This document shows positions 2,561 through 61,461 of a stretch of DNA of 64,000 nucleotides, piece by piece (the first letter of the stretch is position 1; every line of letters starts with the position of its first letter). The DNA lies in NCBI RefSeq assembly GCF_035084215.1, contig NC_090340.1, forward strand, positions 5,518,001 to 5,582,000, in the 5' to 3' direction. The stretch is from Heptranchias perlo (Eukaryota). Under the pieces are notes generated by a model, which saw nothing but the letters and a program-made list of their open reading frames with translations, was not told the DNA's origin and did no database searches. The position numbers and the translations under genes were made by a program.

Positions 2561-3507
2561 TAGTTTAAACCCTCCCCAACAGCACTGGCAAACACTCCCC
2601 CGAGGACATTGGTTCCAGTCCTGCCCAGATGCAGACCGTCCAATTTGTACTGGTCCCACCTCCCCCAGAACCGGTTCCAATGGCCCAGGAATTTGAATCC
2701 CTCCAGCTTGCACCATCTCTCAAGCCACGTATTCATCTTAGCTATCCTGTCATTCCTACTCTGACTAACCCGTGGCACTGGTAGCAATCCTGAGATTACT
2801 ACCTTTGAGGTCCTACTCTTTAGTTTAACTCCTAACTCCCTAAATTCAGCTTGTAGGACCTCATCCTGTTTTTTACCTATATCGTTGGTGCCTATATGCA
2901 CCACGACAACTGGCTGTTCACCCTCCCCCTCCAGAATGTCCTGCAGCCGCTCCGAGACATCCTTGACCCTTGCACCAGGGAGGCAACATACCATCCTGGA
3001 GTCTCGGTTGCGTCCGCAGAAACGCCTGTCTATTCCCCTTACAATCGAGTCCCCTATCACTATAGCTCTGCCACTCTTTTTCCTGCCCTCCTGTGCAGCA
3101 GAGCCAGCCACGGTGCCATGAACCTGGCCACTGCCACCTTCCCCTGGTGAGCCATCTCCGCCAACAGTATCCAAAACGGTATACCTGTTTTGGAGGGAGA
3201 TGACCGCAGGGGACCCCTGCACTGCCTTCCTACTCTTCCTCTGTCTGTTGGTCACCCATTCACTATCTCCCTCAGTAATTTTTAACTGCGGTGTGACCAA
3301 CTCACTGAACGTGCTATCCACGACTTTCTCAGCATCGCGGATGCTCCAAAGTGTGTCCATCCGCAGCTCCAGAGCCGTCAAGCGGTCAAACAATAGCTGC
3401 AGCTGGACACACTTCCCGCAGGTGAAGGAATCAGGGATACAGGAAGGAGCCCTGAATTCCCACATCCCACAAGAGGAACATGACACGGCGCTGGGATCTC
3501 CTGCCAT
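2560..3507 (-). CDS. CR1-type LINE ORF1 (N-terminal Cys motif, coiled coil, SGNH/GDSL esterase domain)
   Basis: 315-aa ORF with CSSC...CGKC, VIGDSIVR, LPGARVKD, VHIGTND and DGLHL, the esterase blocks typical of CR1/L2 ORF1p. Confidence 0.93.
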   Translation of the reverse strand: MAGDPSAVSCSSCGMWEFRAPSCIPDSFTCGKCVQLQLLFDRLTALELRMDTLWSIRDAEKVVDSTFSELVTPQLKITEGDSEWVTNRQRKSRKAVQGSPAVISLQNRYTVLDTVGGDGSPGEGGSGQVHGTVAGSAAQEGRKKSGRAIVIGDSIVRGIDRRFCGRNRDSRMVCCLPGARVKDVSERLQDILEGEGEQPVVVVHIGTNDIGKKQDEVLQAEFRELGVKLKSRTSKVVISGLLPVPRVSQSRNDRIAKMNTWLERWCKLEGFKFLGHWNRFWGRWDQYKLDGLHLGRTGTNVLGGVFASAVGEGLN

Positions 3508-24324: not shown

Positions 24325-26968
24325 GTACTTTGAATACAGACAATCTTTTAAGTACCGCCTCTTTATTTTTATCCTATCCAATTTCGCTTCTACCTCCTCC
24401 ATCACGGCTACAATGGCAGCATCCCTTTCTCTAGTGAAGACGGATGCAAAGTAGTCATTTCGTACTTCAGCCATCCTCTCTGCATCCTTAAAAGGAGTTC
24501 CTCCTTTCTCCCTAACCATTCCCACCCTTCCTTTGACTACCTTTTCACCATTTATATGTTTATAAAAGTCTTTTGGGTTCCCTTTTATGTTTGCCGCTGA
24601 TCTATTCTCATACGCTCGCGTTGTCCTTCTTTTTCACTTTTTTCAATCTCCTCTGTATTTTCTGTATTTAGTCTGCTTCTCTACTGCATTATGAACCTTA
24701 AATTGGTCATCAGCCTCATATTGCTGGTTCATTTTAATCTCTATATCTTTCGTCATCCAATGAGCTATAGCTTGGGATGCCCTTCCTTTCCCCCTCGTAT
24801 GATTGTTTGTGATTACTCTGTACCCGAAACAACACCTCCTTGAAGGCCTCCCATTGTTCAATTACTCTTTTGTCAGCCAATTTTTGATTGCAATCCACCT
24901 GGACAACATCCCCTTTAAAGTTACTGAAATTAGCTCTCCTCCAGTTTAATATTTTCACATTTGATTGTTCCTTGTCCTTTTTCCATAACTATTCAAAAAC
25001 TAATAATATTATGATCACTGTTCAACAAATGCTCCCCCACAGACATGTGCTCCACCTGCCCCACTTCATTCTCCAGAACTAGACCCAGCACTGTTTCCTT
25101 CCTCGTTGGGCTGGAAACACACAGTTCCAGAAAGTTATCTTTTACACATTTCAGGAATATTCCCCCTCTTTTCACTTCACACTCTTACTGTCCCGTCTAT
25201 ATTGGGACATACGAAGTCCCCAGTTATCACCACTCTATAGTTTTTACATCTTTCTGAAATGTGCCTGAATAATTGCTCCTCTATCTCCTTCCCACTATTT
25301 GATGGCCTGTAATATACCCAGTAGCATAATAGCTCCTCTATATTTCCTTAATTCTAACCAAATAGATTCTGTCTCTAACCACTCAACTACATCATCACCT
25401 TCCAGTGCTCTAATAGTTTATTTGATCGATACTGCCACCCCCACCTTTCTTTCCTTCCCTATATTTCTGAACACCTTGTAGCCAGGAATAATAAGTATCT
25501 AATTCTCCCCTTCTTTGAGCCAGGTTTTTGTTCTTGTCTCTTTATCATAGTTCCATTTGGTAATTTGAACCTGCAGCTTACCAAACTTACTCACCATGCT
25601 GTGTGCATTTACACACATGCACTCCAAGCTCATCTTAGGCTGCCTCGCATTTGCCCCCTATTTGATCCCTCCTATTTCTGAACTCTTCTTCGCTCTAGTG
25701 CTATTTGTCCCTCCCAGTCCTCTATTCACCTTGTTTCTCCTTTGTAATGTTTTACCCTGGTGCCTATCCCCCTGCCAAATTAGTTTAATTGCCCCCTCCC
25801 CAGAGCTCTATTTAACCTCCACGTAAAGACATTGGTCCCAGCTCTGTTGAGGTGCAACCCATCCTTCTTGAACAGATCACACTTGCCCCACACCTGGTCC
25901 CAATGCCCCAGGAATCTAAAGCCCTCCCTCCTGCACCATTTTTCCACCCACGAATTTACCTGTCTTATCCAACTATTCCCTTACTCACTAACACGTGGCA
26001 CTCTGATTCATCCAGATATTACCAACTTTGGAGTCCTGCTTGTATACCTCCAGAACTCCTCAAAATCTGTCTGCAGGAACTCATGCCTTTTCCTTCCTAT
26101 GTCTATCCTATATTCCCACATGGTCCACGACTTCTGTCTGTCATCCTTACACATTCAAAATTTTCTGCACCCGCTGAGCGATGTCCTTTACCCTGGTACC
26201 AGGGAGGCAATACACCATGCAAAATCACGTCGGCGGTTGCAGAAATGCTTGTCTATCCCCCTAACTATAAATCCCCTATAAAAAACTGCATTTCTTACCC
26301 CGCCTCACTGCGCAGCCGAGTCTCCCGCTGTGCAATGGATTTGCTCCTCGCTGCACTCGACCAAGTCGTCAACACTCTCATTGGTATTCATCATTGAGTA
26401 CCGGTTTTTAATTACCGCACTCCCAGGGGACTTCTGCACGGCTTGCCTGTTTGTCCTCGTCCGTCTGGTGTTCGTCCAATCTCCACCTGAACTCTCTGCA
26501 GCTGCGGGGTGAACACCTCATGAAACGTGCTATCCACGAAACACTCAGCTCCCACTATGCACTGTAGTTACGCCAGCCGCCCCTGAAGCTCAGATACTCT
26601 GAGCTCAAGCTCCAGCAGTTGTTGGCACTTCCTGCACATGTTTTAGTCCAGGACACACGAAGTGCACTGGAGACCCCACATGGCAAAGGATTTGCATGCA
26701 ATGCGCCCCAACTGTCCTGCTAACAGTTATTTGAAGTTTTTGTTCAGCTTTCGGACACTTTGCTGTTTGTCTGACACTAAAACACTAACCACTAAAAAAC
26801 ACTAACCAACTACTAAAGACACGAACCATTAAGAACAATAATCACTAAAAGTACCAACCAATAACTTAAATACTAATGACTTAACCTCGGCGCTCCTCTT
26901 TGTCCCGTGTCACTTCTTGACTTTTTCCTATTTTTATTAATCCGAGCGGCTCCCTTTATGCTCCGCAC

Positions 26969-36775: not shown

Positions 36776-38862
36776 CTAAGGTAGCCAAACTTAGTGGGAG
36801 GATAGAAGATTGGGAAGTCTTCAAAAGACAGCAAAAAGTAACGAAAGGATTGATTAAGAAAGGGAAGTTAGATTATGAAAAGAAATTAGCAAAATATATA
36901 TAAACAGATAGCAAGGGTTTCTATAGTTATATAAAAGGAAAAAGGGTGGCGAAGGCAAACGTAGGTCCCTGAGAGGATGAGACCGGGAAATTAATGGTGG
37001 GAAACATGGAGATGGCAAAAATGCTGAACAAATATTTTGTTTCAGTCTTTACGGTAGAGAACACTAAGAATATCCCAACACTGGACAAACAGGGGGCTCT
37101 ACGGGGGGAGGAGCTAAATACGATTAAAATCACTGAGGAGATGGTACTCAGTAAAATAATGGGACTCAAAGCGGATAAGTCCCCTGGACCTGATGGTTTA
37201 CATCCTAGGGTCTTGAGGGAAGTGGCAGTAGGGATTGTGGATGCTTTGGTGATAGTTTTGCAAAATTCCCTGGACTCAGGAGAGGTCCCGGCAGATTGGA
37301 AAACTGCTAATCTAACACCGTTATTTAAAAAGGGTAGTAGGCAGAAGGCTGGAAATTATAGGCCAGTTAGCCTAACATCTGTGGTGGGTAAAATTTTGGA
37401 GTCTATTATTAAGGAGACAGTAAAGGAACATTTAGATAAGCATAATTTAAAAGGACAAAGTCAGCATGGCTTTATGAAGGGGAAGTCATGTCTGACAAAT
37501 TTGTTTGAGTTCTTTGAGGATATAATGTACAGGGTGGAAAAAGGGGAACCAGTGGACGTAGTGTATTTAGACTTCCAGAAGGCATTCGACAAGGTGCCAC
37601 ATAAAAGATTATTACTTAAGATAAAAAATCACGGGATTGGGGGCAATATTCTGGCATGGGTGGAGGATTGGTTATCGAACAGGAGGCAGAGAGTTGGGAT
37701 AAATGGTTCATTCTCGGACTGGCAGCCAGTAAACAGTGGTGTTCCACAGGGGTCGGTGCTGGGTCCCCAACTCTTTACAATCTATATTAACGATTTGGAG
37801 GAGGGGACCGAGTGCAACATATCAAAATTTGCAGATGATACAAAGATGGGAGGGAAAGTAGAGAGTGAGGAGGACATAAAAAACCTGCAAGGGGATATAG
37901 ACAGGCTGGGTGAGTGGGCGGAGATTTGGCAGATGCAATATAATATTGGAAAATGTGAGGTTATGCACTTTGGCAGGAAAAATCAGAGAGCAAGTTATTT
38001 TCTTAATGGCGAGAGACTAGAAAGTACTGCAGTACAAAGGGATCTGGGGGTCCTAGTGCAAGAAAATCAAAAAGTTGGTATGCAGGTGCAGCAGGTGATC
38101 AAGAAAGCCAACGGAATGTTGGCTTTTATTGCTAGGGGGATAGAATATAAAAACAGGGAGGTATTGCTGCAGTTATATAAGGTATTGGTGAGACCGCACC
38201 TGGAATACTGCATACGGTTTTGGTGTCCACACTTAAGAAAAGACATACTTGCTCTCGAGGCAGTACAAAGAAGGTTCACTCGGTTAATCCCGGGGATGAG
38301 GGCGTGGACATATGAGGAGAGGTTGAGTAGATTGGGACTCTACTCATTGGAGTTCAGAAGAATGAGAGGCGATCTTATTGAAACATATAAGATTGTGAAG
38401 GGGCTTGTTCGGGTGGATGCAGTAAGGATGTTCCCAAAGATGGGTGAAACTAGAACAAGGGGGCATAATCTTAGAATAAGGTGCTGCTCTTTCAAAACTG
38501 AGATGAGGAGAAACTTCTTCACTCAGAGAGTGGTAGGTCTGTGGAATTTGCTGCCCCAGGAAGCTGTGGAAGCTACATCACTAGATAAATTTAAATCAGA
38601 AATATACAGTTTCCTAGAAGTAAAGGGAATTAGTGGTTATGGGGAGCGGGCAGGAAATTGGACATGAAGCTGAGTTCGGATCGGTCAATGCCCTGTGGGT
38701 GGCGGAGAGGGCCCAGGAGCTGAGTGTCCGGGTCCTGCTCCTACTTCGTGTGTTCTTTAGTTTTGTGGTTGGGATCAGATCAGCCATGATCTTATTGAAT
38801 GGCGGAGCAGGCTCGAGGGGCCGATTGGCCTACTCCTGCTCCTATTTCTTATGTTCTTATGT
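36776..38862 (+). mobile_element. Young 5'-truncated CR1 inserted in an older CR1 3' remnant (about 36470-39060)
   Basis: Uninterrupted 557-aa RT ORF, tcttatgttcttatgtt tail; host reads ctcgctgcca | catggagtg across the insertion. Confidence 0.92.
36994..38667 (+). CDS. CR1 ORF2 reverse transcriptase portion (no endonuclease; not a host gene)
   Basis: KSPGPDG, NYRPVSLTS, YLDFQKAFDKV, GVPQGSVLGP, KFADDT. Confidence 0.85.
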   Translation: MVGNMEMAKMLNKYFVSVFTVENTKNIPTLDKQGALRGEELNTIKITEEMVLSKIMGLKADKSPGPDGLHPRVLREVAVGIVDALVIVLQNSLDSGEVPADWKTANLTPLFKKGSRQKAGNYRPVSLTSVVGKILESIIKETVKEHLDKHNLKGQSQHGFMKGKSCLTNLFEFFEDIMYRVEKGEPVDVVYLDFQKAFDKVPHKRLLLKIKNHGIGGNILAWVEDWLSNRRQRVGINGSFSDWQPVNSGVPQGSVLGPQLFTIYINDLEEGTECNISKFADDTKMGGKVESEEDIKNLQGDIDRLGEWAEIWQMQYNIGKCEVMHFGRKNQRASYFLNGERLESTAVQRDLGVLVQENQKVGMQVQQVIKKANGMLAFIARGIEYKNREVLLQLYKVLVRPHLEYCIRFWCPHLRKDILALEAVQRRFTRLIPGMRAWTYEERLSRLGLYSLEFRRMRGDLIETYKIVKGLVRVDAVRMFPKMGETRTRGHNLRIRCCSFKTEMRRNFFTQRVVGLWNLLPQEAVEATSLDKFKSEIYSFLEVKGISGYGERAGNWT

Positions 38863-48209: not shown

Positions 48210-49769
48210 GCGTCGGTTCGGTGACTGGTGTGCAGCAACAGAATGGAGCAATCGTCGATTCATTACTTCACAGGCCTTCTGTGACACTCATAATGACGGG
48301 GCTGATGAGGGTTTAACCCCTGGAGAAGTTTCAACAACGTTACAGGTGAGTTGGGCCGAAAATAGTGAAGAATTAAATGAAAGAAACGCTCAAGATCGTC
48401 TGTTCGGCGACAATAATGAGCCAAACGGACCATTTTTTCTAATAAATAGCAATAGTGTTTTAATTTAAATCTAAGTTCATTAACCCGATGCATGAGGCAA
48501 GTATTGTTTTGATTTGAATTTGTGATTTAAGTTATTTGTTGAATTAGCCTTGGGATCCTTCTACCTCCAGATACATTGAGAATGTTTTTATTTTACCTTC
48601 TTGTGATACGGCCTAAGTTGCTATGTATCATTGACAGGCAACTGTAAGTATGAATTTTGAATGAAATGGTGTCCAAATGTTTGCATTCACCTTGGGAACT
48701 AAAATAATAAGGGATAGAATTTCCGCGGGGCTTCCGCCGATATTCCCCCGAAGTCAAGGTGGGAAACGGAGGGACAAAAATGCGCTCCCATTTTCATGTT
48801 GGGATGACGGACTATGGGAGTAATTTCAATTTCTGGCAATCATGTACACAGATTAAATGTTTTCTTAAAATTCAGAGCACGGAGTATTAGACAAATGGGC
48901 AGAAGTGACTCAATTGAGATAAATTTAAAACTCAATTTTACTCCAATAGTTTATCAGACCCTACCAACATTTTACACCCAGACTAACGTCTTAGCTGACT
49001 GACTCTCCAGGTCCACGGCATCTCACGCTGATACTGCTTGTCTTCCGTGAACTCTCGAGTCAATTCGGAACCTGACTGACGAGTTATACTGCCACTTTAT
49101 AACTGAATCTGGTGTAACTACCGCCGTAGAGTTCATAACAAAACAACTAATATCCGTAGTTCATAAAATACCCTTAAATATATAAAAATGACCCGAAGAT
49201 AAATTTGAATTTATCCACAGTTATTCCAACTGCTATCTAATTACCTCCTCTCCCATATGGATTCGTGCTATCAAGACATGGAACTGTAACTCTATCCCTC
49301 AACCCATGGTAGGTCCTCGCCTCCAAAATGTGTTTGTTACACGAATCAGACGGATAGATGGACCTTGAGTACTGAGGAGATCCTCTTCAGGTCAACAACT
49401 AACTCATTAATCAGATGCTGTAGAATCAATTAGTTCTTGAAACACTGAACACACGCAATATTCATTCTTCCTGGTGGGTAAAGAAGTGATGATTCATGAA
49501 CTTGTGAGCTCATTTACAATTTTAATAAGCTCCACCCTTTTTTTATTAACACAGCCTCCTTGTTCCTGGTACCGTTTCTGCTCACAGCTAAACCCACAGA
49601 TCTTATCGTAAAAGACATGCATTTCTCCAATCCGCCATTAAAAAGTCATGTGACATTTGACGCCACAAATAAGTTTGAGATTATATTAGATACAAAGCCG
49701 CCCATTCCGCAAATCTTCCTCCATCCCGTTCTTATTCACAACGGATCTAGCGCAGTTTTATTGCCCAAT

Positions 49770-49824
49770 ATGTTTGTGAGTGCGTTACTTTGGAGCATGT
49801 GTTTCTTGAGCATATTGTATCCAG
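49770..49824 (+). CDS. SIRP-like V-C1 inhibitory receptor, coding exon 1 (signal peptide)
   Basis: ATG..MFVSALLWSMCFLSILYP G|gtagac; 55 nt, phase 1, joins in frame to the V exon. Confidence 0.75.
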
Positions 49825-50162
49825 GTAGACTTTTTTATTGTTATAAATTAACTGTCGCTGATCAAGAAACAGCACATAAAGTCGATCTTATAGTTGATGT
49901 GCAATTGGCTATTGTTTGTTGCTAGTTTAATTTGATTTAATTCTTATCACGTCATGTGTTCCTTGCCGCTGGGAGAAAACAGGATGAGAAAGTTGCTGTA
50001 ATTCATGATAATTCAATGAGGAAACACATCCAGGATCTGGAGAATAATTCTGATAGTTAGATATATTCAATTACAAATATATCTATGGACGGGACGCGCA
50101 ATGTTAATTTGATGGTGCAGATCATCTTTCCTATACATTAATTATATAACTTTTCTTGATAG

Positions 50163-50474
50163 TTGCTGTGGACAATTCTGGCAAGGTAACTCCTGGCATT
50201 GTACAAAAGAAGGCGCTTAGAGGTACAAAACTTATCTTGCAATGCCCTTTCCCCTTCGACCTCGATCATTCAAGCGTGACCGTTTACTGGTTGAGGCAGG
50301 ATAACGATGCCTTCCTGGAAGAAGATAACAGAAAACAGTTTCAAGTAAAGAAAGGCGGCGCCTATCTTCACCTCCTGAATGTGACTATCCTGGACTCCGG
50401 AATTTATCAGTGTGTAGTCAAAGATAAGGATCTAACGGTTGGAAAAGAAACTCGTGTACAAGTTGTTGTATATG
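50163..50474 (+). CDS. SIRP-like receptor exon 2, Ig V(J)-type domain
   Basis: ttttcttgatag | ... | gtaagt, 312 nt, phase 1-1. LILQC, VYWLRQ, AYLHLLNV, DSGIYQC, J-like VGKETRVQV. Confidence 0.95.
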
Positions 50475-50550
50475 GTAAGTGGCAGTGGAACTGGAAGCGT
50501 GACGGGTTCAGCTGCTGTCGAAACTCATCATCATTTTTCAATCCTCTCTG

Positions 50551-51845
50551 GATACAGGTTTGATGCCGGAGGATTGGAGGACTGCAAATATTTTCCATTG
50601 TTTAAAAAGGGAGCGAGGGATAGACCGAGTAATCACAGGACAGTTAGTCTAACCTCGGTGGTTGGCAAATTATTGGAATGAATTCTGCGGGACAGGATAA
50701 ACCGTCACTTAGGAAGGCGCGGAGTAATCAAGGACAGTCAGCATTGGTTTATTAAGGGAATGTCGGCGTCTGACTAAATTGATTGAATTTTTTGAGGAGG
50801 TAATAAGGAGGGTCGATGAAGGTAGTGCTTTTGTGTAGTCTATATGGATTTTAGCAAGCTTTTGACAAGTTCCCACATGGCAGTTTGGTCAATAAATTAA
50901 AAGCACATATGATCCAAAAGAGCATGGAAAGTTGGATCCAAAATTGGCTCACTGGCCGTAGGCAAATGGTAATGGTCGACAGGTGTTTTTGAGACTGGAA
51001 GGCTGTTTCCAGTGGGGTTTCGCAGCGCTCAGTTCTAGGTCCCTTGTTTTTTATGATGTATGTTTATGATTTGGACTTAAATGTAGGGTGCATGATTAGA
51101 AGGTTGCTGATGATACAAAAATTGGCCGTGTGGTTGATAGTGAGGAGGAAAGCTGTAGGCTGCATGAAGATACCAATGGACCAGTCAGGTTAGCAGAAAA
51201 GCGGCAAATTGAATTCAATCCGGAGAAGTGTGGGTTAATGCATTTAGGCCAGGCAAACAAGACAAGGGAGCATATTGGTTAGGCACAGCTTGAGTACTCT
51301 GTACAGTTCTGGTCACCACATTACAGGAAGGATGTAATTGCACTGGGAAGGGTACAGAGGAAATTGAGGATGATGTTGCCTGGACTGGAGAATTTTAGCT
51401 GTGAGGAAAGATTGGACAGGCTGGGGTTGTTTTCCTTGGAACAAAGGAGGCTGAGGGGTGATTTAATTGAGGTGTACAAAATAATGAGGAGCTCAGATGG
51501 GGTGGATAGGAAGGACCTATTTCCCTTAGCAGAGGGGTAAATAACCAGGGGATGTAGATTTAAAGTGATTGGTGCAAGGATTAGAGGGGAGCTGAGGAAT
51601 TTCTTTCTCACGCAAAGGGCGGTAGGGGTCTGGAAGTTACTGCCTGAAAGGGTGGTAGAGGCAGAAACCTTCAACTCATTTAAAAAGTACCTGGATATGC
51701 ACCTGAAATGCCGTGACTTACAAGGTTACGGACCAAGTGCTCGAAAGTGGGACGAGGCTGGGTGGATCATTTTCGTCCGGCGCATTCACGATGGGCCGAA
51801 TGGCCTCTTTAAGTGCCGTAAATGTTCTATGTTTGTATGATTCTA
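50551..51845 (+). mobile_element. Degenerate CR1 in the V-C1 intron
   Basis: RT remnants and ttctatgtttgtatgattcta tail; similar to 46093-47392. Confidence 0.85.
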
Positions 51846-52658
51846 CATTCATACTGCATTTAACAAGGAATTCAATAAAGAAATGCCCTGTCCATAAAAC
51901 AGTCCAGCTTTCTAATTGTTGATAACGACACCTGCTCAAAAATAAGGAAAATGTTCCAGTTCCAGAATCTCTGCAAAATGTGCCAACTGACCTATATCAT
52001 CACTTGTGATCTTATTTTATATTTATCAAAGAACGTGAATTCAAGGCTGGGAACTAACAAGCTTCTTTTCAATATTAGCACTGTCAGGATGAAATGTCCT
52101 GGGGTCACATGCAATTTTATACATGTTTAAAGAATCTATTTGGAAAGAAGAGGATAGAAAAGTAAATTCCCATTCCCATGATTTATACGACACGATTGCA
52201 TTTTCTCCAATCCAGATAAAATTCCTGAACCGCCATTCGGTGGAACTGGCGAGACGCATATGATAAAGCCGGTCCCGTAGTTCAGACCGAGGGTCGAACT
52301 CGATCCTTTCTGTTCAGAAGAAGACAATGTTCTCTATGTAACAACAGAACGCGAACTGTTTTAGTGCAACAGTTTAAGCGCAGCATGCCGATTGGAACAC
52401 ATTGATAAGTATGAAAAGAGACCCAATGTTGAAAATATTTTTGTGAAATATAACAGTGATACGTCAATGGTGTAGAAGAGGAAGTTCGGAAAATTATTTC
52501 TCTAAATACAATGAAGAAAGGTTTAGATTAGGCTTCAATCAGGATAAATAATGATTTTCGGGACAACTACGATGCCCGACACATCATAAAAACAAAGCGT
52601 GGATATCGTGTACAGGTCAGACATTTTGCTTTACCTCTTTTTGCTCTTTTCCGTTTAG

Positions 52659-52964
52659 CTGCCCCCGTTCCTCTTAAAATTGTCTCCACAACATCTGAAG
52701 GGGCTTCATCTGGTTTTCTGAGACTCCAGTGCAGAACGGCTGCTTTTTATCCGAAGGACTTCAACCTCACCTGGTTTAAAAACGGCACTGAAATTGTGAC
52801 AGGATTTAAAACTGAACAACTTGCAAAGACAGAGGGACTGTATGAAGTTATCAGCTCCTTAGAAGTAACACAACCAATCCAGCGCGGCACAGTTTACACC
52901 TGTCAAGTGTATCACCTTGCAATCTCGATTCCAGCAATTGCCAACTACACCGTTGCTAACGAAG
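52659..52964 (+). CDS. SIRP-like receptor exon 3, Ig C1-set domain
   Basis: Long pyrimidine tract + ttag | ... G | gtaaaa, 306 nt, phase 1-1. LQCRTAAFYPKDFNLTWFKNG ... GLYEV.S.L ... YTCQVYH (Ig/MHC [FY]xCx[VA]xH signature). Confidence 0.95.
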
Positions 52965-53960
52965 GTAAAATTACAGTACACGCAGTATTTTTAATCGATT
53001 TCTGAGTTCCTTCCCCCAGTAATCGAGTTCCGTCGAGTTTCCATTGCAGATAATGGATAAATACAAGAATATGTGGGAAGAGCTTACTACAGTTGTTTGC
53101 ATGCTATTCTATCACTTCAGAAGTCTGGTTTCACTCCAGCTCCCATTGAAGGTTCCTTTTTCTCTTGGGTGTATGGATGTGATGAGAATTAAGTTGGACG
53201 CAAGCAACTTAACCATGAGTGGACACCAGCCCTCAGCACAGTTTCCATAATTTATGTTAACTGGCATAATATTGCCAGTTCACGAAGAGAGGGCACGGTG
53301 AGAGTTGATGCCGGAAATCGAACCATGCGTCATGGGGATAGGACTTGTTAGTAATGGATGGAGTGGGGCAATTGAAGATTTTCACATCCCCGCAGCCAAG
53401 GAGCAATCTGAGGTCAGTCCCCGCATCATCCAAAGCATAGTGCGGCTCCCTCGACACTGCACCAAATGTGGAGTAAGAATTACTTTGGTCCCTCTTGTGG
53501 AAAGATAGATAAAACCTTCGTGAAGATTTGCTCCGAAAGGCAGTTCCAGCGAATTTGTGAATCCGCCCCATTGTATTTAAGAGTTCAAACTAAACACTGA
53601 TAAGGGAAAACACCCAAAACGAACGTAATATTTTCCAACATGTCGCGACCACATGAATTCTTATCCCAATGAGCATTACTTGCATCAATTAGTCAAGGAT
53701 CATTCAGTGTGGTTCGGTTCCCCTAATTTCGCATTGCTGCTAATTATCTAAATAACGCGGTACTTCAAAATCTTTGTTGCCGATTTCAAACAAATCAGCT
53801 GAATAGAGATTTAATGCGATGGGCTTGCTAAGACTGTATGTACTGTATTAATTTATTCTCATATGAGTATCTTTGTAAATGATATTTGTAATGTTTAAAC
53901 CTGTATTTATAATTTTTACATTCCACAGATACTAATTTTCATTTGGTATCAATCTCATAG

Positions 53961-54074
53961 ATTTTGCCTCTGCGATCGGTGTTATTCTGATCGCTGGATG
54001 TGCCGGGGGTGCAGTGCTAATTCTGCTATTGACCATTATGACTGTGAAGGGCCTTCAATTCATTACATCCAAAG
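53961..54074 (+). CDS. SIRP-like receptor exon 4, transmembrane
   Basis: aatctcatag | ... G | gtagga, 114 nt, phase 1-1: DFASAIGVILIAGCAGGAVLILLLTIMTVKGLQFITSK. Confidence 0.88.
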
Positions 54075-54581
54075 GTAGGAGCCATCCCAACCTTCGAGAG
54101 CATTAACTTTCTGACAGCGCATTATAACATAGGATTTAAATTAGAAATGAATGGTATTAATCAACTTTTCCACGCAGGTAGAGGCTGACAGGACTGATTA
54201 GAGTTAGCATCATTGGTAGCCACGCGACGCAGTGGTACAGCCATGGACTCATGTTAAAGTGTTTCTGAACGTACATCCCCAGATGTGTTTGATCATAACG
54301 TGACCTTAGCAGGCGGTAGCTGGAGTTTTCTATACCCTGTTGGGGTAGGTCTAGATCCAGTGCAGTGAATATCTTGGATGCAATGATGTTTGCACAACTT
54401 CATCACTAGCGACATAGTACAATCCAACGGGCGTCTTTAACATTCTGGAAATACATCGCGATACTTGACTTCCTATTAAAACCTGCCAACTATTCTAATT
54501 ACATTTGATTTCGTGATTCTGGTGATAAACCAAAATATTGCCCAATTCATGGCGATTCGTTTCAATTTTATTTCCTAACAG

Positions 54582-54625
54582 GCGCAAAGAGGATTTCAGT
54601 GAATACTGCTCGGCATGAAGGTCGG
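54582..54625 (+). CDS. SIRP-like receptor exon 5, juxtamembrane cytoplasmic
   Basis: ttttatttcctaacag | ... | gtaagt, 44 nt, phase 1 to 0: GAKRISVNTARHEGR. It supplies exactly the phase change the next exon needs. Confidence 0.85.
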
Positions 54626-55311
54626 GTAAGTTCACCTTATTTTTCTCTATATTTTGTTTCTCAAGTAAGCTAAAGGTCTCAGATTTTGCACTCAAATAGG
54701 GACACGTTAAGAATGCTTTTTCCCTGGATTTATTCTACATGTCTCGCCGTTCTGCTAAAAGCATCGACATATAGAATAATGAAAGAAGCGTTTAGAAACT
54801 CTCACATCAAGTTTAAGTGGACATATATAAAGTTCACTTTGAACTATCTTATTAAAAGTAGCCATAAAATTTTACAGGACAAACCTTAGCATTCGAGAGC
54901 ATTGCAGGACGTTGTTCGTTCCTTCATGTTAAGTATGTGATAGCGTTGAGAAGCAAACTCCCAACATTGATCCTTGTTCAATTGATAACATATCTCCGCA
55001 GTAGATTTGCAACTTCCTAAACAGTTAATTATTGTTACCTTATTCCAACCTCGCCTTTTTACACTCCTCACAATCAACCCATCCCGTCCTTTTTGCCCGA
55101 TGACATAACTTGGAATCTCCCATGTGACCGAATCCAAAGGGTATATGTGGTGCAACCAATCTGCGGTTACCTTTCACAAGCTACCAGCCTCAAACATCAA
55201 TATTTACACGCGGTTCTTGCCACAAATGGTGGCGTGAAATCTGGAAAACGGAGAGTTGGTGTTAGAACACACATTTTTTCGTTATTCATTCTCGGGATCA
55301 GTGTATCATTT

Positions 55312-56852
55312 TTTGTATTCGTTCATGGGATGTGGGCTTCACTGGCGAGGCCGGCATTTATTGCCCATCCCGAATTGCCCTTGAGAGCGTGGAGGTGAGC
55401 CGCCTTCTTGAACCGCTGCATTCCGTGTGGTGACGTTTCTCCCACAGTGCTGTTAGGAAGCGAGTTCCAGGATTTTGACCCAGCGACGATGAAGGAACGG
55501 CGATATATTTCCAAGTCGGGATGGTGTGTGACTTGGAGGGGAACATGCAGGTGGTGTTGTTCCCATGAGCATGCTGCTCTTGTCCTTCTAGGTGGTAGAG
55601 GTCGTCGGTTTGGGAGGTGCTGTCGAAGAAGCCTTGGCGAGTTGCTGCAGTGCATCCTGTGGATGGTACACACTGCAGCTACTGTGCGCCGGTGGTGAAG
55701 GGAGTGAATGTTTCGGGTGGTGGATTGGGTGCCAATCAAGCTTTGTCCTGGATGGTGTCGAGCTTCTTGAGTGTTGTTGGAGCAGCACTCATCCAGGCAA
55801 TTGGAGAGTATTCCATCACACTCCTGACTTGTGCCTTGTAGATGGATGAAAGGCTTTGGGGAGTCAGGAGATGAGTCACTTGCCACAGAATACCCAGCCT
55901 CTGACCTGCTCTTGTAGTCACAGCATTTATATGGCTGGTCCAGTTAAGTTTCTGGTCAATGATGACCCCCAGGATGTTGATGATGGAGAATTCGGCGATG
56001 GTAATGCCGTTGAATGTCAAGGGGAGGTGGTTAGACTCTTTTTTGTTGGAGATGGTCATTGTCTGGCACCTGTCTGGTGCGAATGTTGCTTGCCAATTGT
56101 GAGCCCAAGCCTGGATGTTGTCCAGGACTTGCTGCATGCGGGCTCGGACTGCTTCATTATCTGAGGGGTTGCGAATGGAACTGAACACTGTGCAATCATC
56201 AGCGAACATCTCCATTTCTGACCTTATGATGGAGGGAAGCTCATTGATGAAGCAGCTGAAGATGGTTGGGCCTAGGCCCCTTCCTTGAGGAACTCCTGCA
56301 GCAATGTTCTGGGGCTCAGATGATTGGCCTCCAACAACGACTACCATCTTCCTTTGTGACTTCAGCCACTGGAGAGTTTTCGCTCTGATTCCACTTGACT
56401 TCAATTTTACTCGGGCTCCTTGGTCCCACATTCGGTCAAATGCTGCCTTGATATCAAGGGCAGTCACTCTCACCTCACCTCTGGAATTGAGCTCTTTTGT
56501 CCATGTTTGGACCAAGGCTGTAATGAGGTCTGGAGCCGAGTGGTCCTGGCGGAACCCAAACTGAGCATCCGTGAGCAAGTTATTGGTGAGTAAGTGACGC
56601 TTGATAGCGCTGTCGGTGACACCTTCCATCACTTTTCTGATGATCGAGAGTAGACTGATGGTGCGGTAATTGGCCGGATTGGATTTATCCTGCTTTTTGT
56701 GAAGTGGACATACCTGGGCAATTTTACACATTGTCAGGCAGATGCCAGTGTTTTAACTGTACTGGAACAGCTCGGCTCGAGGCGCAGCTAATACTGGAGA
56801 ACAAGTCTTCAGCTCCACAGCCGGTATGTTGTCGGGTCCCATCGCCTTTGCA
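55312..56852 (-). mobile_element. Family B LINE, 5'-truncated, in the cytoplasmic intron
   Basis: 331-aa RT ORF 55736-56731 (ALDIKAAFDR, GVPQG, FADDCT) plus family tail. Confidence 0.92.
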
Positions 56853-57225
56853 AGGATTATTGCCCATCTGTAGTTGCCCTGAAAAGGTGCTGGTTGGCCT
56901 TTCTCTTGAACTGCTGACAGAGGTTTGATGCAATTATGTGACTTGCTACGCCAATTCAGAGGACAATTTAGAGTCAACCACTTTGGTGTGGGACTGGAGT
57001 CACAAATAGGTGAAACCGGGTAAGGACAGCAGGTTTCCTTCACTAAAGGAGATCATAGAATCAGTTGGATTTTTACGACAATCGAACAACTTCATGGTCA
57101 CTGTCACGGACACGAGCTTTTTTTATTTCCAAATATTTTAAACTGAATTCAAATTTTCAAACTACCATTTGAACTCACCTGCTCAGACATTTAGCCCAGG
57201 CCCATGGATCGGATGACTAATGTTG
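56853..57225 (-). mobile_element. Older copy of the family B-related SINE
   Basis: Reverse complement shows gagttcaaat, gaccatgaag, attgtcgtaaaaatcc, cctttagtgaaggaaacctgc and the tail gatgggcaataa. Confidence 0.75.
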
Positions 57226-58469
57226 AAAAAAATATCTCTGCAATTAAGTGTGCAGCCCCATGTTAGGAGTAATTTGAAATTGATTTCTTCCTTTCTTAGA
57301 AATATTGGGTCACATGAGATATTTCCTCTGCTCAGGGCCATTCGTCTCTCTCCTAAGCCGACATTATGGCCCCTACGGCCTGCAAAGCAATATCTAATGA
57401 TAATGTCACCAAGGGGGTATAACAATAAGACCCGTCCTTTGTGTGCATTGTATACTGTAATCCGACACATGCCCACATGTGCTTTCCTCCTAGCTTCCGC
57501 ATAATAACGATTCTGCTGAGTCCAGGTCAATTAAATTGCAACTAGCTATTTCATTTGATGTGATATATATGAATCTAAAGATTGCGTTTATCATAACGAG
57601 ATGGACCAATTTTCTATCACCAATACTATATTATGAAACGTTTAACCATTTTATTGGCCGACTGCCTTGAATTTCCTTTCCTGGATGTTAGAACCGAAAA
57701 TGTATCCATTCCCATTCCCATTCTGCGGATGTTGTTCCGCTCAAATTTATTATCACTCTCTTTAGAATGTGCCTGAATATAAATTGGGAATAAATTAGCG
57801 GAAACAATTGGAGCCCAATGAAAGCACCGAACTGACACCGTATAGTCTTTCTATAAGTATGAAAGTTAAGGTTTCAACTCATTCAACAATCAAAAGCACT
57901 CAGTTTTATGTAACGCGCGTTGGGGCGTCCCGTTGTTGTGTAAGGCGCTATGTAAATGCAATTATTTCCTATTACTATATTAAGGAATATGAGGCATCGT
58001 GTTTAAGAACCTGAAATCTTTAAAGTGACCTATATTTATGCCGTAAATCGCATGAAATGAAATATAAAACATGATATCGGTCTCAGTCAGCATACATAAA
58101 ATAAAACGCTCATAAAACTGCAATAAAACACCAGAAAAAAATGATTTGCGTATAAGGCCCTGTTACGTATGATTTGGGGCCATTATTAAGGTGGGAGTTG
58201 CGTTCAGTGGGAGGTATCGATTGACATCCGTAAACGGTCGAAGAGATTTCGGCGTATTTTAGTTAGATACATAATTCACGTATGCCCAATTTCTGCGATC
58301 TTCTAAGCATATAATTAATTTGCGCGTCATTGTTTACGTGTGGCTCTTGGTATCAAGTTCAGAGGAAATTCAAGCCGTCGACTGTAACTTCGACAGAGAC
58401 CTGGAAAAGATTATGTAAAATGTGTGTGCACGCATCTTCCTCACAAATTACGCCACTTCTAGCTCTACG

Positions 58470-58880
58470 TTCATTTAGCACACTTATCTAGAGTCAGCAG
58501 GTCATGGATTGAAGCATCATTGCAGGAGCTGATCCTATAACGTAGGTTGATGTTCACGTGCAGTGCTCAGATGAGACGAGAAACCAAGGCTCCCTACACT
58601 TTATCAGGTACATGTGGAATATCCCATAATAAGATTTGAAGAACATTAGCCAAGATGTCCTGATGTCCTGGCCCAACACTGATACTTCACCCAACAGCAG
58701 CGACACAGATTGACTGGTCATTTATTTCATTGGTATTTGCGCGAATATGCTGTGCAAAAATTGAATACCACATTTCCCTATATAAAAACAATATCTATGT
58801 TATAGAAATAATTTATTTGCAATGAAACGCTTCGGAAGATCCAGAGTACCTCGACGCCTCCATGCAAATATATTTTCTTA
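58470..58880 (+). mobile_element. Degraded Deu-domain SINE (SacSINE1/AmnSINE1-like)
   Basis: cagatgagacg..aaaccaaggc, tttgaagaa, tgtcctggcc, cagattgactggtcatt, tgctgtgcaaaaattg resemble the DeuSINE core (recognised from memory, not searched). Confidence 0.6.
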
Positions 58881-59642
58881 TTCCTCTGCCCCTCCAAACT
58901 TCGCTTATCGAGGATTAGCTTGTAGAGGTGACATTTAAAACGATCACGTTCCCCTTGTGTTGCGGGCCATATTTATTTAACTGATTATCACTGTCAGAAT
59001 GTATTTAATTGTTTCTTTACTATAATTGATTGATTAATGTTTCCATTTAGCAATCACATAGGAGGGTCTCCATTTATTTTCCAGTTGCTGCATCCTGCAC
59101 GCTAGACTAAGGACGAGCCGATTGATTTATGTGCCTCAATTTATTTATTGTTTTATCCTGAAGAAGGCGACCTGAGATCCATTAGTTGTATTAATATTTA
59201 CAAAGTAATTTCACACCAAATTGAAGCTTGGCTTATTAATTATAGAACATACCGCATTCTGAATTTAGAACACTGTAGTAATGAAGGAGAATGTCATATA
59301 TCCGAATAAACATGTTCCATTATTTCGCACTGACGCGAAACAGTTTATATTCCAGGAGAGCGAATAGTTGCATAGGTTCTCATCTAACTTTCAAAATGTT
59401 ACAAATTAATGTTTATTACGTTCTGAGCAGTTTAGCATTTTCTAATTAAGGGATATCTCCATAATGTTCCCTGGTGAGCTGTACATTGGAGAGAGAAATA
59501 GTAAACGATGTTAAGAGTCTACAGAGCTAATAGTGACGCAAATGCGACCAAGTTGCCTCAATTATCTATTATATGCAAAGGCTTCTTAATTTTGAAACTT
59601 CAGAAAAAGCAACCTAATGAATGGTAAACATTGATTTTCTAG

Positions 59643-59753
59643 AAAGAACCAGGGACAGCTGAGGACAAGCTGATGTACGCGGCTCTGGATGTAATTGCCT
59701 CCAAAAAAACCGCAAGACCTAAACAACAGGAAGAGAGTACAGTGTATGCAAAG
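59643..59753 (+). CDS. SIRP-like receptor exon 6, ITIM exon A
   Basis: ttgattttctag | ... AAG | gtacag, 111 nt, phase 0-0: KEPGTAEDKLMYAALDVIASKKTARPKQQEESTVYAK. Confidence 0.88.
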
Positions 59754-59897
59754 GTACAGCTGAGTCCTCATGTGCAAACAATAATCATGTAAATCAGAAT
59801 AGCGTTGGTTTGGGTTGATACTGACAATTAATTTGAAGTAATTTTCAGGTTTTTTTGTAGAAAAATGAAAACATTGTTCTCAATGTTTGTTTTACAG

Positions 59898-60026
59898 ACC
59901 AAACAGAGCGGTGCTGATAGCAAACTGACCTACGCTACTCTGAATTTGACTGCTTCCAAGAAAATATCGAAATCTAAACATAACGACACAAGTCTAGTAT
60001 ACGCAGCAGTGAAGACCAGCAGATAA
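59898..60026 (+). CDS. SIRP-like receptor exon 7, ITIM exon B and stop
   Basis: tgtttgttttacag | TKQSGADSKLTYATLNLTASKKISKSKHNDTSLVYAAVKTSR*. Confidence 0.9.
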   Translation, partial: TKQSGADSKLTYATLNLTASKKISKSKHNDTSLVYAAVKTSR

Positions 60027-61461
60027 CTTCGGCAAACATGGATACTTTGAAAGGTTTCGAGCGATATTTCAGTCACAGATGCGTTTACGTTGCATATCCA
60101 TTATATCCAGCTACTGCCCTATATCTAGTCTTCCATTCTTTTCCCACGTCCTGGAACATGTTTTGCCTCCCATCATTCTTGAGTTAACACTCGCCATTCC
60201 TGCGTCGAACTCACGCACTGTGTGTCATTGAATCTCTGAAGTGACTTCTTTGCAACCGTCAACATTGTTCCCATTCCCTTTGAACTCTCCATCATGTTTG
60301 AAATCATGAAACACTAAGTTATTCTCCAATCTATTTGTCTACAGTCAGATTCCATAGTAACTTTCTCACGATTCTCATGTACTGTTAACAAGGGCATTAA
60401 TTTAACTCCATTTCTGTAGTTCCTTTTTTCTTGTATTCGTGTTTTTCTCCTTGGGATGGATCTGACTGCATCAGCTGTTCACGACTTATTTGTTTGTTTA
60501 ATGCCTTTATTTTCTTAATGTTTCATTCTACTATTATCCCAGCTATATTTCCTCTCTTAGTTTATCGTTCCCCTCCCACCCATTCCCTTCACATCAGGTT
60601 AAATTAAAATGTTTCATTTTTCATTTTCGTATTCAGAATAAGAACCAAGTCCCATGTGTTAATCTGCCTGTTCTCTGCACAGTTGCGGACTGGCTCCTGT
60701 CTTTCCTGCTTTTTGATTGACTTGATTTCAGAGTCAGCCGGTTTTTTTTACCATTATTCTTATGATAGCACTTCTAATACATTCTCGCCATCTACCCACA
60801 ACATCATGTAGCATTGAGCCCAGTGTTCCATCCACAACTCGTCAACTTAATCACTGACATGCGATCACATTGCAATATGATTCAACGGGACAGGATCAGT
60901 TTTCAGGTGCACACTTGATACCCAGCTTGTTTTTCGATTGAGTATATTGCTCCAAAGACTGTTGATCCCATTTCCAAAATTCAGTTCCCGATGAATCAGC
61001 AGTTTCTGCATGTAAGGACAGCAGAACAATATTTGTTCTTGCTTTGCTTGAGACGCCCAACCGCTCCAGCTTTCGCCTCAGTACAATTCATGATCTGGAA
61101 AACCTCAGCTTATAGGTAGACTGAGAACTAAGCTAAGCACCGCCCCTCACATCCATTTTGCTATCATTTTGTTCCGTGCATACCCTCAACATCTTCCTCT
61201 TCCGTTCACCACCCTCTCCTTGAACTCCTGCACGAGTGCACTCCTCTACTGGTATCTCTCACACAGCTTACTCTTACTCTGACGCATGCATATCTCATAT
61301 TCCAGCTCAGCTTCACTAACTATCTCCACTCTCCATAAATCTTAACTCGTTCAGAACATTGGAATTCGTACGCTCACCCACAGAATGTTCGTATTCCCGA
61401 AATTCTATCCGTTCCAAGCTGCAGTGGCTCCCTGGCAGCCAAAGTCCTCGTCCTCGCCTGT

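What the first reader, a model, noticed from the sequence alone, without database searches (positions are those of the whole stretch)
49770..60026. Hidden non-rearranging V(J)-C1-TM inhibitory receptor with a SIRP-alpha-like four-tyrosine tail
Seen: seven exons with GT-AG ends and matching phases (55+312+306+114+44+111+129 = 1071 nt, 356 aa + stop) giving leader, V, C1, uncharged TM and a tail with LMYAAL, TVYAKT, LTYATL and LVYAAV (Tyr spacing 23/14/23). Established: C1-set domains are largely limited to Ig, TCR, MHC, tapasin, SIRP and a few B7-type proteins; SIRP-alpha has V-C1-C1 and two pairs of tyrosine motifs (ITYADL, TEYASI, LTYADL, SEYASV) that recruit SHP-1/2. Inference: a probable shark receptor with a TCR/Ig-light-chain-like V-C1 ectodomain, fully germline-joined (no RSS seen beside the V), wired to an inhibitory tail. 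It has one C1 rather than two, so it may be a distinct or basal SIRP-related lineage relevant to antigen-receptor origins.
Basis: partly seen in the sequence, partly recalled or inferred. Interest (0 to 1): 0.9.

Follow-up and report, generated by a model that had tools for sequence, protein, structure and literature searches.

The report
Shark inhibitory V-C1 paired-receptor gene
This is a real, intact seven-exon shark gene for a non-rearranging inhibitory cell-surface receptor, one member of a large shark, ray and chimaera family that public genome annotation labels "SIRP-alpha-like" but that I found described in no paper.

Summary
Exon 2 is a compact V/I-type Ig domain and exon 3 a classical C1-set domain. 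The membrane span is uncharged. The tail carries four tyrosines spaced 23/14/23.

The gene is not a one-off. It belongs to a multigene family found across cartilaginous fishes. NCBI's automatic names for members include "SIRP-alpha-like", "SIRP-beta-1-like", "B7-H6-like", "TCR-beta-like" and "MHC class II beta-like". Every exon has a conserved counterpart in annotated proteins of other sharks.

The family is paired. Long-tailed inhibitory members, like this gene, coexist with short-tailed members that carry an Arg in the membrane span. One such activating protein is about 80% identical to this gene across the ectodomain.

Kinship with SIRP is unresolved. The tail and overall layout run in parallel with SIRP-alpha, but there is one C1 domain, not two. 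The C1 domains form their own clade, and the V domain is no closer to SIRP V than to other V domains.

No RNA evidence could be obtained, and no paper on the family was found. Another agent of this scan already reported the same family elsewhere in this genome (s1-882560).

The parts
49770..49824 (+). Exon 1: start codon and most of the signal peptide (split leader, phase-1 donor)
   Evidence: A hydrophobic leader whose MF.S..LW...FL.I.YP pattern is also seen in Heptranchias P0177 and P0157. Donor CAG|gtagac.
50163..50474 (+). Exon 2: end of the leader plus a compact V/I-type Ig domain. It has Cys27, Trp42, Cys83, one NVT sequon and a degenerate J-like G strand (G-K-E-T-R-V-Q-V).
   Evidence: Pfam V-set 4e-9, I-set 8e-7. 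AlphaFold model pLDDT 88.8 with strands A' B C (C') D E F G and no C''. 79% identical to P0177 and 61% to P0014 without gaps.
52659..52964 (+). Exon 3: C1-set Ig domain with the FYPKD..LTWFKNG and YTCQVYH signatures and three N-glycosylation sequons
   Evidence: Pfam C1-set 1.2e-13. 81% identical to P0157 and 80% to P0177. The family clade has 100/99 support.
53961..54074 (+). Exon 4: short stalk, an uncharged membrane span with a conserved Cys at its outer edge, and a basic stop-transfer end
   Evidence: 76% identical to the membrane span of Heterodontus P0153. The Cys is conserved in inhibitory members.
54582..54625 (+). Exon 5: 44-nt juxtamembrane cytoplasmic exon that shifts the phase from 1 to 0
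   Evidence: A counterpart is present in P0014, P0153 and P0154.
59643..59753 (+). Exon 6: first two-tyrosine unit, an ITIM (LMYAAL) followed 23 residues later by TVYAK|T
   Evidence: 69% identical to two repeated units in P0153.
59898..60026 (+). Exon 7: second two-tyrosine unit (ITIMs LTYATL and LVYAAV) and the TAA stop. It is a tandem duplicate of exon 6.
   Evidence: The exon 6/7 peptides are 47% identical (E 1e-6). The DNA aligns without gaps, 67 of 111 positions identical. 53% identical to the end of Stegostoma P0154.
50535..51870 (.). Retrotransposon fragment inside intron 2; not part of the product
   Evidence: This is the only part of 49700-54700 covered by contigs of runs X1-X3, and the coverage is very deep.
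55736..56731 (-). Antisense LINE reverse-transcriptase ORF inside the 5-kb intron 5; not part of the product
   Evidence: Pfam RVT_1 1.9e-29.
60603..60608 (+). First polyadenylation-signal-like hexamer (ATTAAA) after the stop codon
   Evidence: Pattern scan. Its use is not shown.

Best explanation
The locus encodes an inhibitory member of a multigene family of non-rearranging, paired (inhibitory/activating) V-C1 IgSF receptors found across cartilaginous fishes. The product is a type I membrane glycoprotein with five parts. A split leader comes first. A compact V/I-type domain is the probable ligand-binding head. One C1-set domain serves as a stalk. The membrane span is uncharged. The tail of about 100 residues is built from two duplicated exons, each carrying two tyrosines 23 residues apart. 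Three of the four tyrosines are canonical ITIMs. The fourth is an ITSM-like TxYxxT. The proposed mechanism follows. Ligand engagement next to an activating receptor lets Src-family kinases phosphorylate the tyrosines. The paired phosphotyrosines then dock the tandem SH2 domains of SHP-1/SHP-2-type phosphatases, which damp activation, as in SIRP-alpha. Sister genes with about 80% identical ectodomains, an Arg in the membrane span and almost no tail would signal the opposite way through an ITAM adaptor. Shown here: the gene structure, the domains, the motifs, the family and its two forms. Inferred: membrane topology, phosphorylation, phosphatase and adaptor recruitment, the ligand, and the expressing cell type.
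For: The gene is intact with consensus splice sites, and its junction codons match orthologues. The domains are identified by Pfam. An all-against-all HMMER search with the C1 exon gave about 80 single-C1 proteins at 41-68% identity and more than 67 bits per domain, against at most 41 bits for anything else; all those named are cartilaginous fishes. All exons are conserved in other sharks. The family alignment and a tail census show two forms: long-tailed members with ITIMs and an uncharged span, and short-tailed members with Arg in the span. The tail aligns collinearly with the four tyrosines of rodent SIRP-alpha. There is no RSS. The scan's notes place many similar genes on the same chromosome.
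Against: There is no expression evidence. No RNA run holding the C1 exon was listed, and the three runs laid cover only the intronic transposon. The second Gly of the J-like motif is Glu in this gene, and the second tyrosine motif is neither a canonical ITIM nor a canonical ITSM. No ligand, phosphatase or adaptor binding has been tested. The orthologous proteins used as support are automatic gene models.
Confidence: 0.72

Rival explanations
1. It is a true SIRP-family gene: a basal or co-orthologous SIRP-alpha lineage that kept, or reverted to, one C1 domain. The Arg-bearing relatives would then be SIRP-beta equivalents.
For: NCBI auto-names many members SIRP-alpha-, SIRP-beta-1- or SIRP-gamma-like. 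In the word-limited searches, rodent SIRP-alpha was the only or the best (E 6e-27) hit outside cartilaginous fishes. V, C1, membrane span and all four tail tyrosines align collinearly. The careful C1 tree puts the family with the SIRP-type clan against the Ig-type clan at 94/98 support. SIRP-alpha 2wng ranks 4th in the PDB for the closest homologue. The skate member P0007 shows that V-C1-C1 arises readily by exon duplication.
Against: There is one C1, not two. The split in the C1 tree is an unrooted three-way junction: holding the SIRP-type clan apart from the family costs only 1.4 lnL (AU p 0.395), and the quick tree grouped the family with the Ig side. Per-domain scores to mammalian SIRP-alpha D2 (24.5 bits) equal those to IgG CH3 (25.3 bits). 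The family V profile scores SIRP-alpha V at only 17.7 bits, below NITR (45) and IgNAR V (24). ITIM pairs at about 23-residue spacing also occur in unrelated receptors (general knowledge).
Confidence: 0.2
2. It is a B7-family, B7-H6-like molecule: a V-C1 cell-surface ligand rather than an inhibitory receptor.
For: The predicted ectodomain of the 80%-identical homologue P0177 superposes best on human B7-H6 (VIA Z 15.2, rmsd 2.0-2.3 A over about 180 residues, 26% identity). Butyrophilins and ICOS-L come next. NCBI names P0177, P0162 and P0152 'NCR3 ligand 1-like'. PD-L1 V is among the best hits for the V exon.
Against: The VIA Z values are tied with antibody light chains within 1 unit. By sequence, B7-H6 falls below SIRP-alpha, B7-H3 and Ig chains. 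Pfam prefers the classical C1-set (51.7 bits) to the butyrophilin and CD80 C-domain models (22.8 and 16.4 bits). The family consensus carries a J-like GxGTxLxV G strand and has paired ITIM and Arg-span forms, which are receptor hallmarks rather than B7 hallmarks. The inter-domain geometry is a prediction. The 2012 paper on shark B7H6/NKp30 could not be read.
Confidence: 0.08
3. It is a recently inactivated or never-expressed family member: an open frame kept by chance in a birth-and-death gene cluster.
For: No transcript evidence was found. The J-like motif is degenerate (Gly to Glu). The gene is embedded in transposon-rich DNA with 2-5 kb introns holding LINE fragments. Related models show decay, such as P0157 lacking a V cysteine and P0014 having lost the first tail tyrosine.
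Against: All seven exons are open over 1071 nt with consensus splice sites and conserved Cys/Trp cores. All four tyrosines are kept. The V model folds with high confidence.
Confidence: 0.1

Closest known systems
SIRP-alpha / SIRP-beta (signal-regulatory proteins, PTPNS1/SHPS-1)
   Same: A non-rearranging N-terminal V-type domain is followed by classical C1-set domain(s). The inhibitory form has an uncharged membrane span. The tail has four tyrosines in two pairs (23/14/23 here, 24/17/24 in rodent SIRP-alpha) that align collinearly. There are sister genes with a basic residue in the span and a short tail.
   Different: This gene has one C1 domain, not two. Its V domain is compact, lacks C'', and shows no specific similarity to SIRP V. 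Its C1 domains form a separate clade. It belongs to a large tandem multigene family. The ligand is unknown and nothing points to CD47.
Teleost novel immune-type receptors (NITRs)
   Same: Both are large clustered families of non-rearranging receptors with J-like motifs. Most members are inhibitory with ITIMs and a minority are activating with a charged membrane span. The family's V profile finds the second (I-type) domain of grass carp NITR13 as its best hit outside the family (45 bits).
   Different: NITRs have V or V+I domains and no C1-set domain. They are known only from bony fishes. The comparison set was small and selected by other criteria.
B7-H6 / butyrophilin / B7 family
   Same: All share a V-C1-TM layout. 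The predicted rod-like ectodomain superposes best on B7-H6 (Z 15.2, rmsd about 2 A, 26% identity).
   Different: B7 molecules are ligands without paired ITIM tails or activating partners with a charged span. The sequence scores are lower than for SIRP-alpha or Ig chains. The family keeps a J-like G strand.
UrIg / UrIg2 (non-rearranging shark antigen-receptor-like genes; PMC12227049)
   Same: Both are cartilaginous-fish genes with a single-exon V(J) domain, a split leader and C1 domains. UrIg2 is among the best PDB matches (94.8 bits with the family profile).
   Different: [quoted passage not shown] In the C1 tree the shark multi-C1 proteins sit on the Ig-type side, apart from this family.

Membership tests
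SIRP family | Ectodomain of one V-set plus two C1-set domains | tested here: not met
   There is one V/I-type exon and one C1 exon. tblastn of both against the whole window finds no further Ig exon.
SIRP family | SIRP-alpha-type tail: four tyrosines in two ITIM/ITSM-like pairs | tested here: met
   LMYAAL, TVYAK|T, LTYATL and LVYAAV at 23/14/23 spacing. They are collinear with ITYADL, TEYASI, LTYADL and SEYASV (24/17/24) of P0166.
SIRP family | C1 domains cluster with SIRP D2/D3 in phylogeny | tested here: inconclusive
   In an 88-domain tree the family is its own clade (100/99). The split of family plus SIRP-type side against the Ig-type side has 94/98 support, but the junction is an unrooted three-way one (AU p 0.395). 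No TCR, MHC, IgL or B7 sequences were available.
SIRP family | V domain related to SIRP D1 / binds CD47 | tested here: not met
   BLASTP of the V exon against SIRP-alpha V gives 21.9 bits over 17 residues. The family V HMM gives 17.7 bits. SIRP structures are absent from the top 50 fold matches. CD47 binding cannot be tested here.
SIRP family | Conserved synteny with the SIRPA locus | not tested
The window holds no other cellular gene.
Paired inhibitory/activating IgSF receptor families (functional class) | Near-identical ectodomains joined either to an ITIM tail with a neutral membrane span, or to a short tail with a basic residue in the span | tested here: met
   The window gene is the ITIM form. 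Heptranchias P0177 (V 79%, C1 80%) and P0157 (C1 81%) have Arg in the span and tails of about 9 residues.
Rearranging antigen receptors (Ig/TCR) | V segment flanked by an RSS, with a separate J segment | tested here: not met
   There is no heptamer near the V exon and no RSS in the window. The V and the J-like strand lie in one exon that ends at a splice donor.
VJ-type non-rearranging V domains | G strand with a GxGTxLxV (J-like) motif | tested here: inconclusive
   The family consensus is NGTGxxLxV and P0177 has G-K-G-T-F-V-Q-V. The window gene has G-K-E-T-R-V-Q-V, with the second Gly lost.
C1-set Ig domains | Match to the Pfam C1-set model, with the FYP..W..NG and YxCxVxH signatures | tested here: met
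   PF07654 scores 51.7 bits against a cut-off of 21. The domain aligns to Ig CH3, IgM, UrIg2 and MHC alpha-3.
B7 family (B7-H6-like) | V-C ectodomain specifically related to B7 members | tested here: inconclusive
   The best rigid-body fold match is B7-H6 (Z 15.2, 26% identity), but it is tied with others. By sequence B7-H6 scores 67 bits with the family profile, against 83 for SIRP-alpha and 76 for a lambda chain, and it is absent from the top 60 for P0177.
NITR family | V (plus or minus an I domain) ectodomain without a C1 domain; bony fishes | tested here: not met
   A C1-set domain is present. Only the compact V resembles the NITR I-type domain.
UrIg/UrIg2 | A single-exon VJ domain followed by several C1-type domains (nurse shark UrIg2: VJ plus nine) | tested here: not met
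   This gene has a single C1 domain. The architecture of UrIg2 is taken from PMC12227049.

The most novel reading that the evidence does not exclude
The family may be an ancient, independent V(J)-C1 lineage that sits at the junction between SIRP-type and Ig-type C1 domains. On that reading it is a surviving non-rearranging cousin of the antigen-receptor precursor, wired to ITIM/ITSM pairs. It could also be the cartilaginous-fish stock to which both the SIRPs (tail, C1) and the bony-fish NITRs (compact J-bearing domain, paired logic) trace back.
Probability: 0.15. Interest if true: 0.8.

Novelty: new variant of a known kind. Interest (0 to 1): 0.45.

Why it matters
Paired inhibitory/activating IgSF families such as KIR, LILR, SIRP, CHIR and NITR are central to innate recognition. 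I found none described for cartilaginous fishes in the literature I could search.

This family joins a J-bearing, germline-joined V-type domain to a classical C1 domain, which is the antigen-receptor layout, and to a SIRP-alpha-style tail. It therefore bears on two questions: how old the SIRP/SHP inhibitory module is, and which non-rearranging V-C1 genes existed beside the precursor that the RAG transposon invaded.

For this one gene the yield is more modest. It is a well-supported annotation of an intact inhibitory member. The family appears in public annotation only under a mix of automatic names.

Tried and rejected
- **RNA evidence.** The single run search with the C1 exon listed no RNA holder. 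Laying the three offered runs on 49700-54700 covered only the intron-2 transposon. This says nothing either way about expression.
- **Search with the V region of P0177.** It scored only 13 candidates, all within the family.
- **ESM Atlas.** It did not accept the window's V exon. For P0177 it gave only generic V/I-set clusters.
- **Alternative activating exon.** I looked for an Arg-bearing membrane-span exon in the window and found none.
- **Literature.** Seven full-text searches found no paper on a shark SIRP-like or V-C1 ITIM family. Four likely relevant papers are not held (PMC6761025, PMC10530332, PMC3709836, PMC4594805), so prior description cannot be excluded.
- **UrIg/UrIg2 membership.** Rejected because of domain number.
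- **Chance ORFs.** Rejected on the Pfam E-values and on cross-species conservation.
- **The quick C1 tree.** It seemed to place the family with Ig heavy-chain domains. The careful tree and the AU test showed that this placement is not resolved.
Full report
**Observation**

I read 49500-60300 and translated each proposed exon on its own. The seven exons are 49770-49824, 50163-50474, 52659-52964, 53961-54074, 54582-54625, 59643-59753 and 59898-60026. They sum to 1071 nt and end in TAA. Every intron begins with GT and ends with AG behind a pyrimidine-rich tract. The phases are 1,1,1,1,0,0.

The split codons at the first four junctions read Val, Ala, Asp and Gly. Database proteins of other sharks have exactly these residues at the corresponding places.

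Pfam assigns exon 2 to V-set (4e-9; I-set 8e-7) and exon 3 to C1-set (1.2e-13, 51.7 bits against a cut-off of 21). Exon 4 holds an uncharged hydrophobic span.

Exons 6 and 7 each carry two tyrosines 23 residues apart, and 14 residues separate the two pairs. The two exons are tandem duplicates: 47% identical as peptides (E 1e-6), with a gap-free DNA alignment at 67 of 111 positions.

No RSS heptamer lies near the V exon, and no heptamer-spacer-nonamer occurs anywhere in the window. tblastn of all exons finds no second copy in the window. The rest of the window is retrotransposon sequence.

Every search with window sequence was exon by exon. Full-length comparisons used database proteins of other species.

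**What it belongs to**

I ran an exhaustive HMMER search of 1.84 billion representative proteins with the C1 exon. Re-scored per domain, it shows a sharp break. About 80 proteins with a single C1 domain score 67-170 bits (41-81% identity). Nothing else exceeds 41 bits.

All members whose source I looked up are cartilaginous fishes: sharks, rays and the chimaera Callorhinchus. NCBI's automatic names for them are inconsistent. They include 'tyrosine-protein phosphatase non-receptor type substrate 1-like' (SIRP-alpha-like), 'SIRP beta-1-like', 'SIRP gamma-like', 'NCR3 ligand 1-like' (B7-H6-like), 'TCR beta chain-like', 'H-2 class II beta-like' and 'uncharacterized'. That spread is what one expects when there is no true named orthologue.

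Each window exon has a conserved counterpart:

| Window exon | Closest counterpart | Identity |
|---|---|---|
| V | Heptranchias perlo P0177 | 79% |
| V | Heterodontus P0014 (357 aa, same seven-part layout) | 61%, no gaps |
| C1 | P0157 | 81% |
| C1 | P0177 | 80% |
| Membrane-span exon | Heterodontus P0153 | 76% |
| Exon 6 | P0153 | 69% |
| Exon 7 | C-terminus of Stegostoma P0154 | 53% |

This cross-species conservation of every exon and junction is the best available support for the splice model, because no transcript data could be had. The window's own protein did not appear among the hits of the protein searches I ran.

**A paired family**

The alignment of 16 members and a census of 59 members with a detectable membrane span show two forms.

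- One form, to which the window gene belongs, has a neutral span with a conserved Cys at its outer edge. Its tail is roughly 80-200 residues long and most such tails carry one or more ITIMs (up to four counted in P0153). Heterodontus P0153 repeats the two-exon unit.
- The other form has an Arg in the span, at about the position of that Cys, and a tail of only 9-50 residues.

The two proteins closest to the window's ectodomain, P0177 and P0157, are of the Arg type. This is the classical signature of paired inhibitory/activating receptors. No alternative Arg-bearing exon exists in the window.

The scan's own notes list many similar genes on the same chromosome. They lie from 87 kb to 2.3 Mb upstream and from 21.7 kb to 13.4 Mb downstream of the window. 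Another agent has already described the family on other DNA of this genome (s1-882560).

**The V domain**

An AlphaFold model of the exon-2 product, built with a 47-sequence family alignment, has pLDDT 88.8. It shows strands A', B, C, a short C', D, E, F and G, but no C''.

Its best Foldseek matches are neuregulin Ig, CRTAM V, PD-L1 V, TREM-1 and titin or NCAM I-set domains. Ig/TCR and SIRP V domains are not among them.

The family consensus has a J-like NGTGxxLxV G strand. In the window gene the second glycine is glutamate, so 'V(J)' is a family trait that is degenerate here.

A family V profile finds the membrane-proximal I-type domain of grass carp NITR13 as its best hit outside the family (45 bits). 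That is above coelacanth SIRP-like V (26), IgNAR V (24) and rodent SIRP-alpha V (17.7). The protein set compared was small and had been chosen by other criteria.

**Relation to SIRP**

In favour:
- Rodent SIRP-alpha was the only hit or the best hit (E 6e-27) outside cartilaginous fishes in the word-limited searches.
- Lungfish, coelacanth and lizard 'SIRP-like' proteins are among the nearest outside C1 domains.
- A family member aligns collinearly with SIRP-alpha through V, C1, the membrane span and all four tail tyrosines.
- Tyrosine spacing is 23/14/23 here and 24/17/24 in SIRP-alpha.
- SIRP-alpha ranks 4th in the PDB for P0177.

Against:
- There is one C1 domain, not two.
- The per-domain score to SIRP-alpha D2 (24.5 bits) equals that to IgG CH3 (25.3 bits).
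- With the family profile, UrIg2 (94.8 bits), SIRP-alpha (83.4, three domains), lambda light chains (65-76), B7-H3 (68) and B7-H6 (67) are all about equally distant.

A maximum-likelihood tree of 88 C1 domains gives three clans:
- the family itself (100/99 support);
- a SIRP-type clan, holding SIRP-alpha D2/D3, sarcopterygian SIRP-like proteins and several unnamed multi-C1 proteins;
- an Ig-type clan, holding IgNAR, IgH and shark multi-C1 proteins.

The careful tree joins the family to the SIRP-type side at 94/98. However, keeping the SIRP-type clan separate costs only 1.4 log-likelihood units (AU p 0.395), and the quick tree had drawn the family on the Ig side. Without a root, and without TCR, IgL, MHC or B7 sequences, the sister group is undetermined.

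I therefore do not file the gene as a SIRP. It works like SIRP-alpha, but membership is unproven, and one defining feature (V-C1-C1) is not met.

**Relation to B7-H6**

The two-domain model of P0177 has pLDDT 87.3 and pTM 0.71. It superposes best on human B7-H6, with VIA Z 15.2, rmsd 2.0-2.3 A over about 180 residues and 26% identity. Butyrophilins and ICOS-L follow. Antibody light chains reach the same Z only at about 9 A rmsd, because of a different elbow angle.

This is a lead, not a test, for three reasons. The Z values are tied. The inter-domain geometry is predicted. By sequence, B7-H6 ranks below SIRP-alpha. The 2012 paper on B7H6 and NKp30 evolution was not available to me.

**Mechanism**

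The most likely reading is an inhibitory receptor. Its compact V-type head binds an unknown ligand. Its paired tyrosines, once phosphorylated, recruit tandem-SH2 phosphatases of the SHP-1/2 type. Arg-bearing sister genes with near-identical heads presumably signal through an ITAM adaptor.

Only the anatomy and the family pattern are shown here. The signalling steps are inferred from established ITIM biology and from the parallel with SIRP-alpha.

**Limits**

- No RNA run holding the C1 exon was listed. The three runs laid held only the intronic transposon.
- Seven literature searches found no description of the family. Four subscription-journal papers that might mention it are not held.

**Verdict**

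This is a real, intact inhibitory member of an uncharacterised but publicly annotated paired V-C1 receptor family of cartilaginous fishes. It is a new variant of a known kind. Its interest is moderate for this single gene and higher for the family as a whole.

Noticed in passing
window 59754-59792: Reading through the exon-6 donor gives TVYAKV, then 12 more codons and a stop. Intron retention would therefore create a canonical ITSM (TxYxxV) and drop exon 7. Chimaera members have TVYAKI or TVYTQV at this place in the spliced form.
   Followed up: partly
P0007 (Amblyraja radiata, 493 aa): This skate member has V-C1-C1 with two nearly identical C1 copies. A SIRP-like three-domain layout has thus arisen inside this family by recent exon duplication.
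   Followed up: partly
P0153 (Heterodontus francisci, 444 aa): The tail repeats the two-exon, four-tyrosine unit, giving 10 tyrosines in the tail. The number of ITIM units varies by exon duplication among members.
   Followed up: partly
window 53990-54000 (exon 4) and alignment A1: A conserved Cys at the outer edge of the membrane span in inhibitory members lies where activating members have Arg. It may be a site of disulfide pairing or palmitoylation.
   Followed up: no
window 50433-50456 (exon 2): The second glycine of the J-like GxGTxLxV motif is glutamate in this gene (G-K-E-T-R-V-Q-V). The 79%-identical Heptranchias protein keeps G-K-G-T-F-V-Q-V.
   Followed up: partly
P0157 (Heptranchias perlo): The second canonical V-domain cysteine is replaced by tyrosine in this activating-type model. 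It may be a decaying copy or a variant fold.
   Followed up: no
window 55736-56731 (-) and 50535-51870: A LINE reverse-transcriptase ORF lies antisense in intron 5. A highly repeated transposon fragment in intron 2 was the only part of the gene region covered by the public runs.
   Followed up: yes
window 2560-3507 (-), 21825-24343 (-), 36994-38667 (+): These are further retrotransposon ORFs: a GDSL-esterase/OSK-type ORF typical of CR1-like elements, an endonuclease with reverse transcriptase, and a 557-aa reverse-transcriptase ORF. No other cellular gene was seen in the window.
   Followed up: partly
P0184 (grass carp NITR13), residues 138-239: The I-type second domain of a teleost NITR is the best match outside the family to this family's compact V profile (45 bits). 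This hints at a link between NITRs and the shark family.
   Followed up: partly
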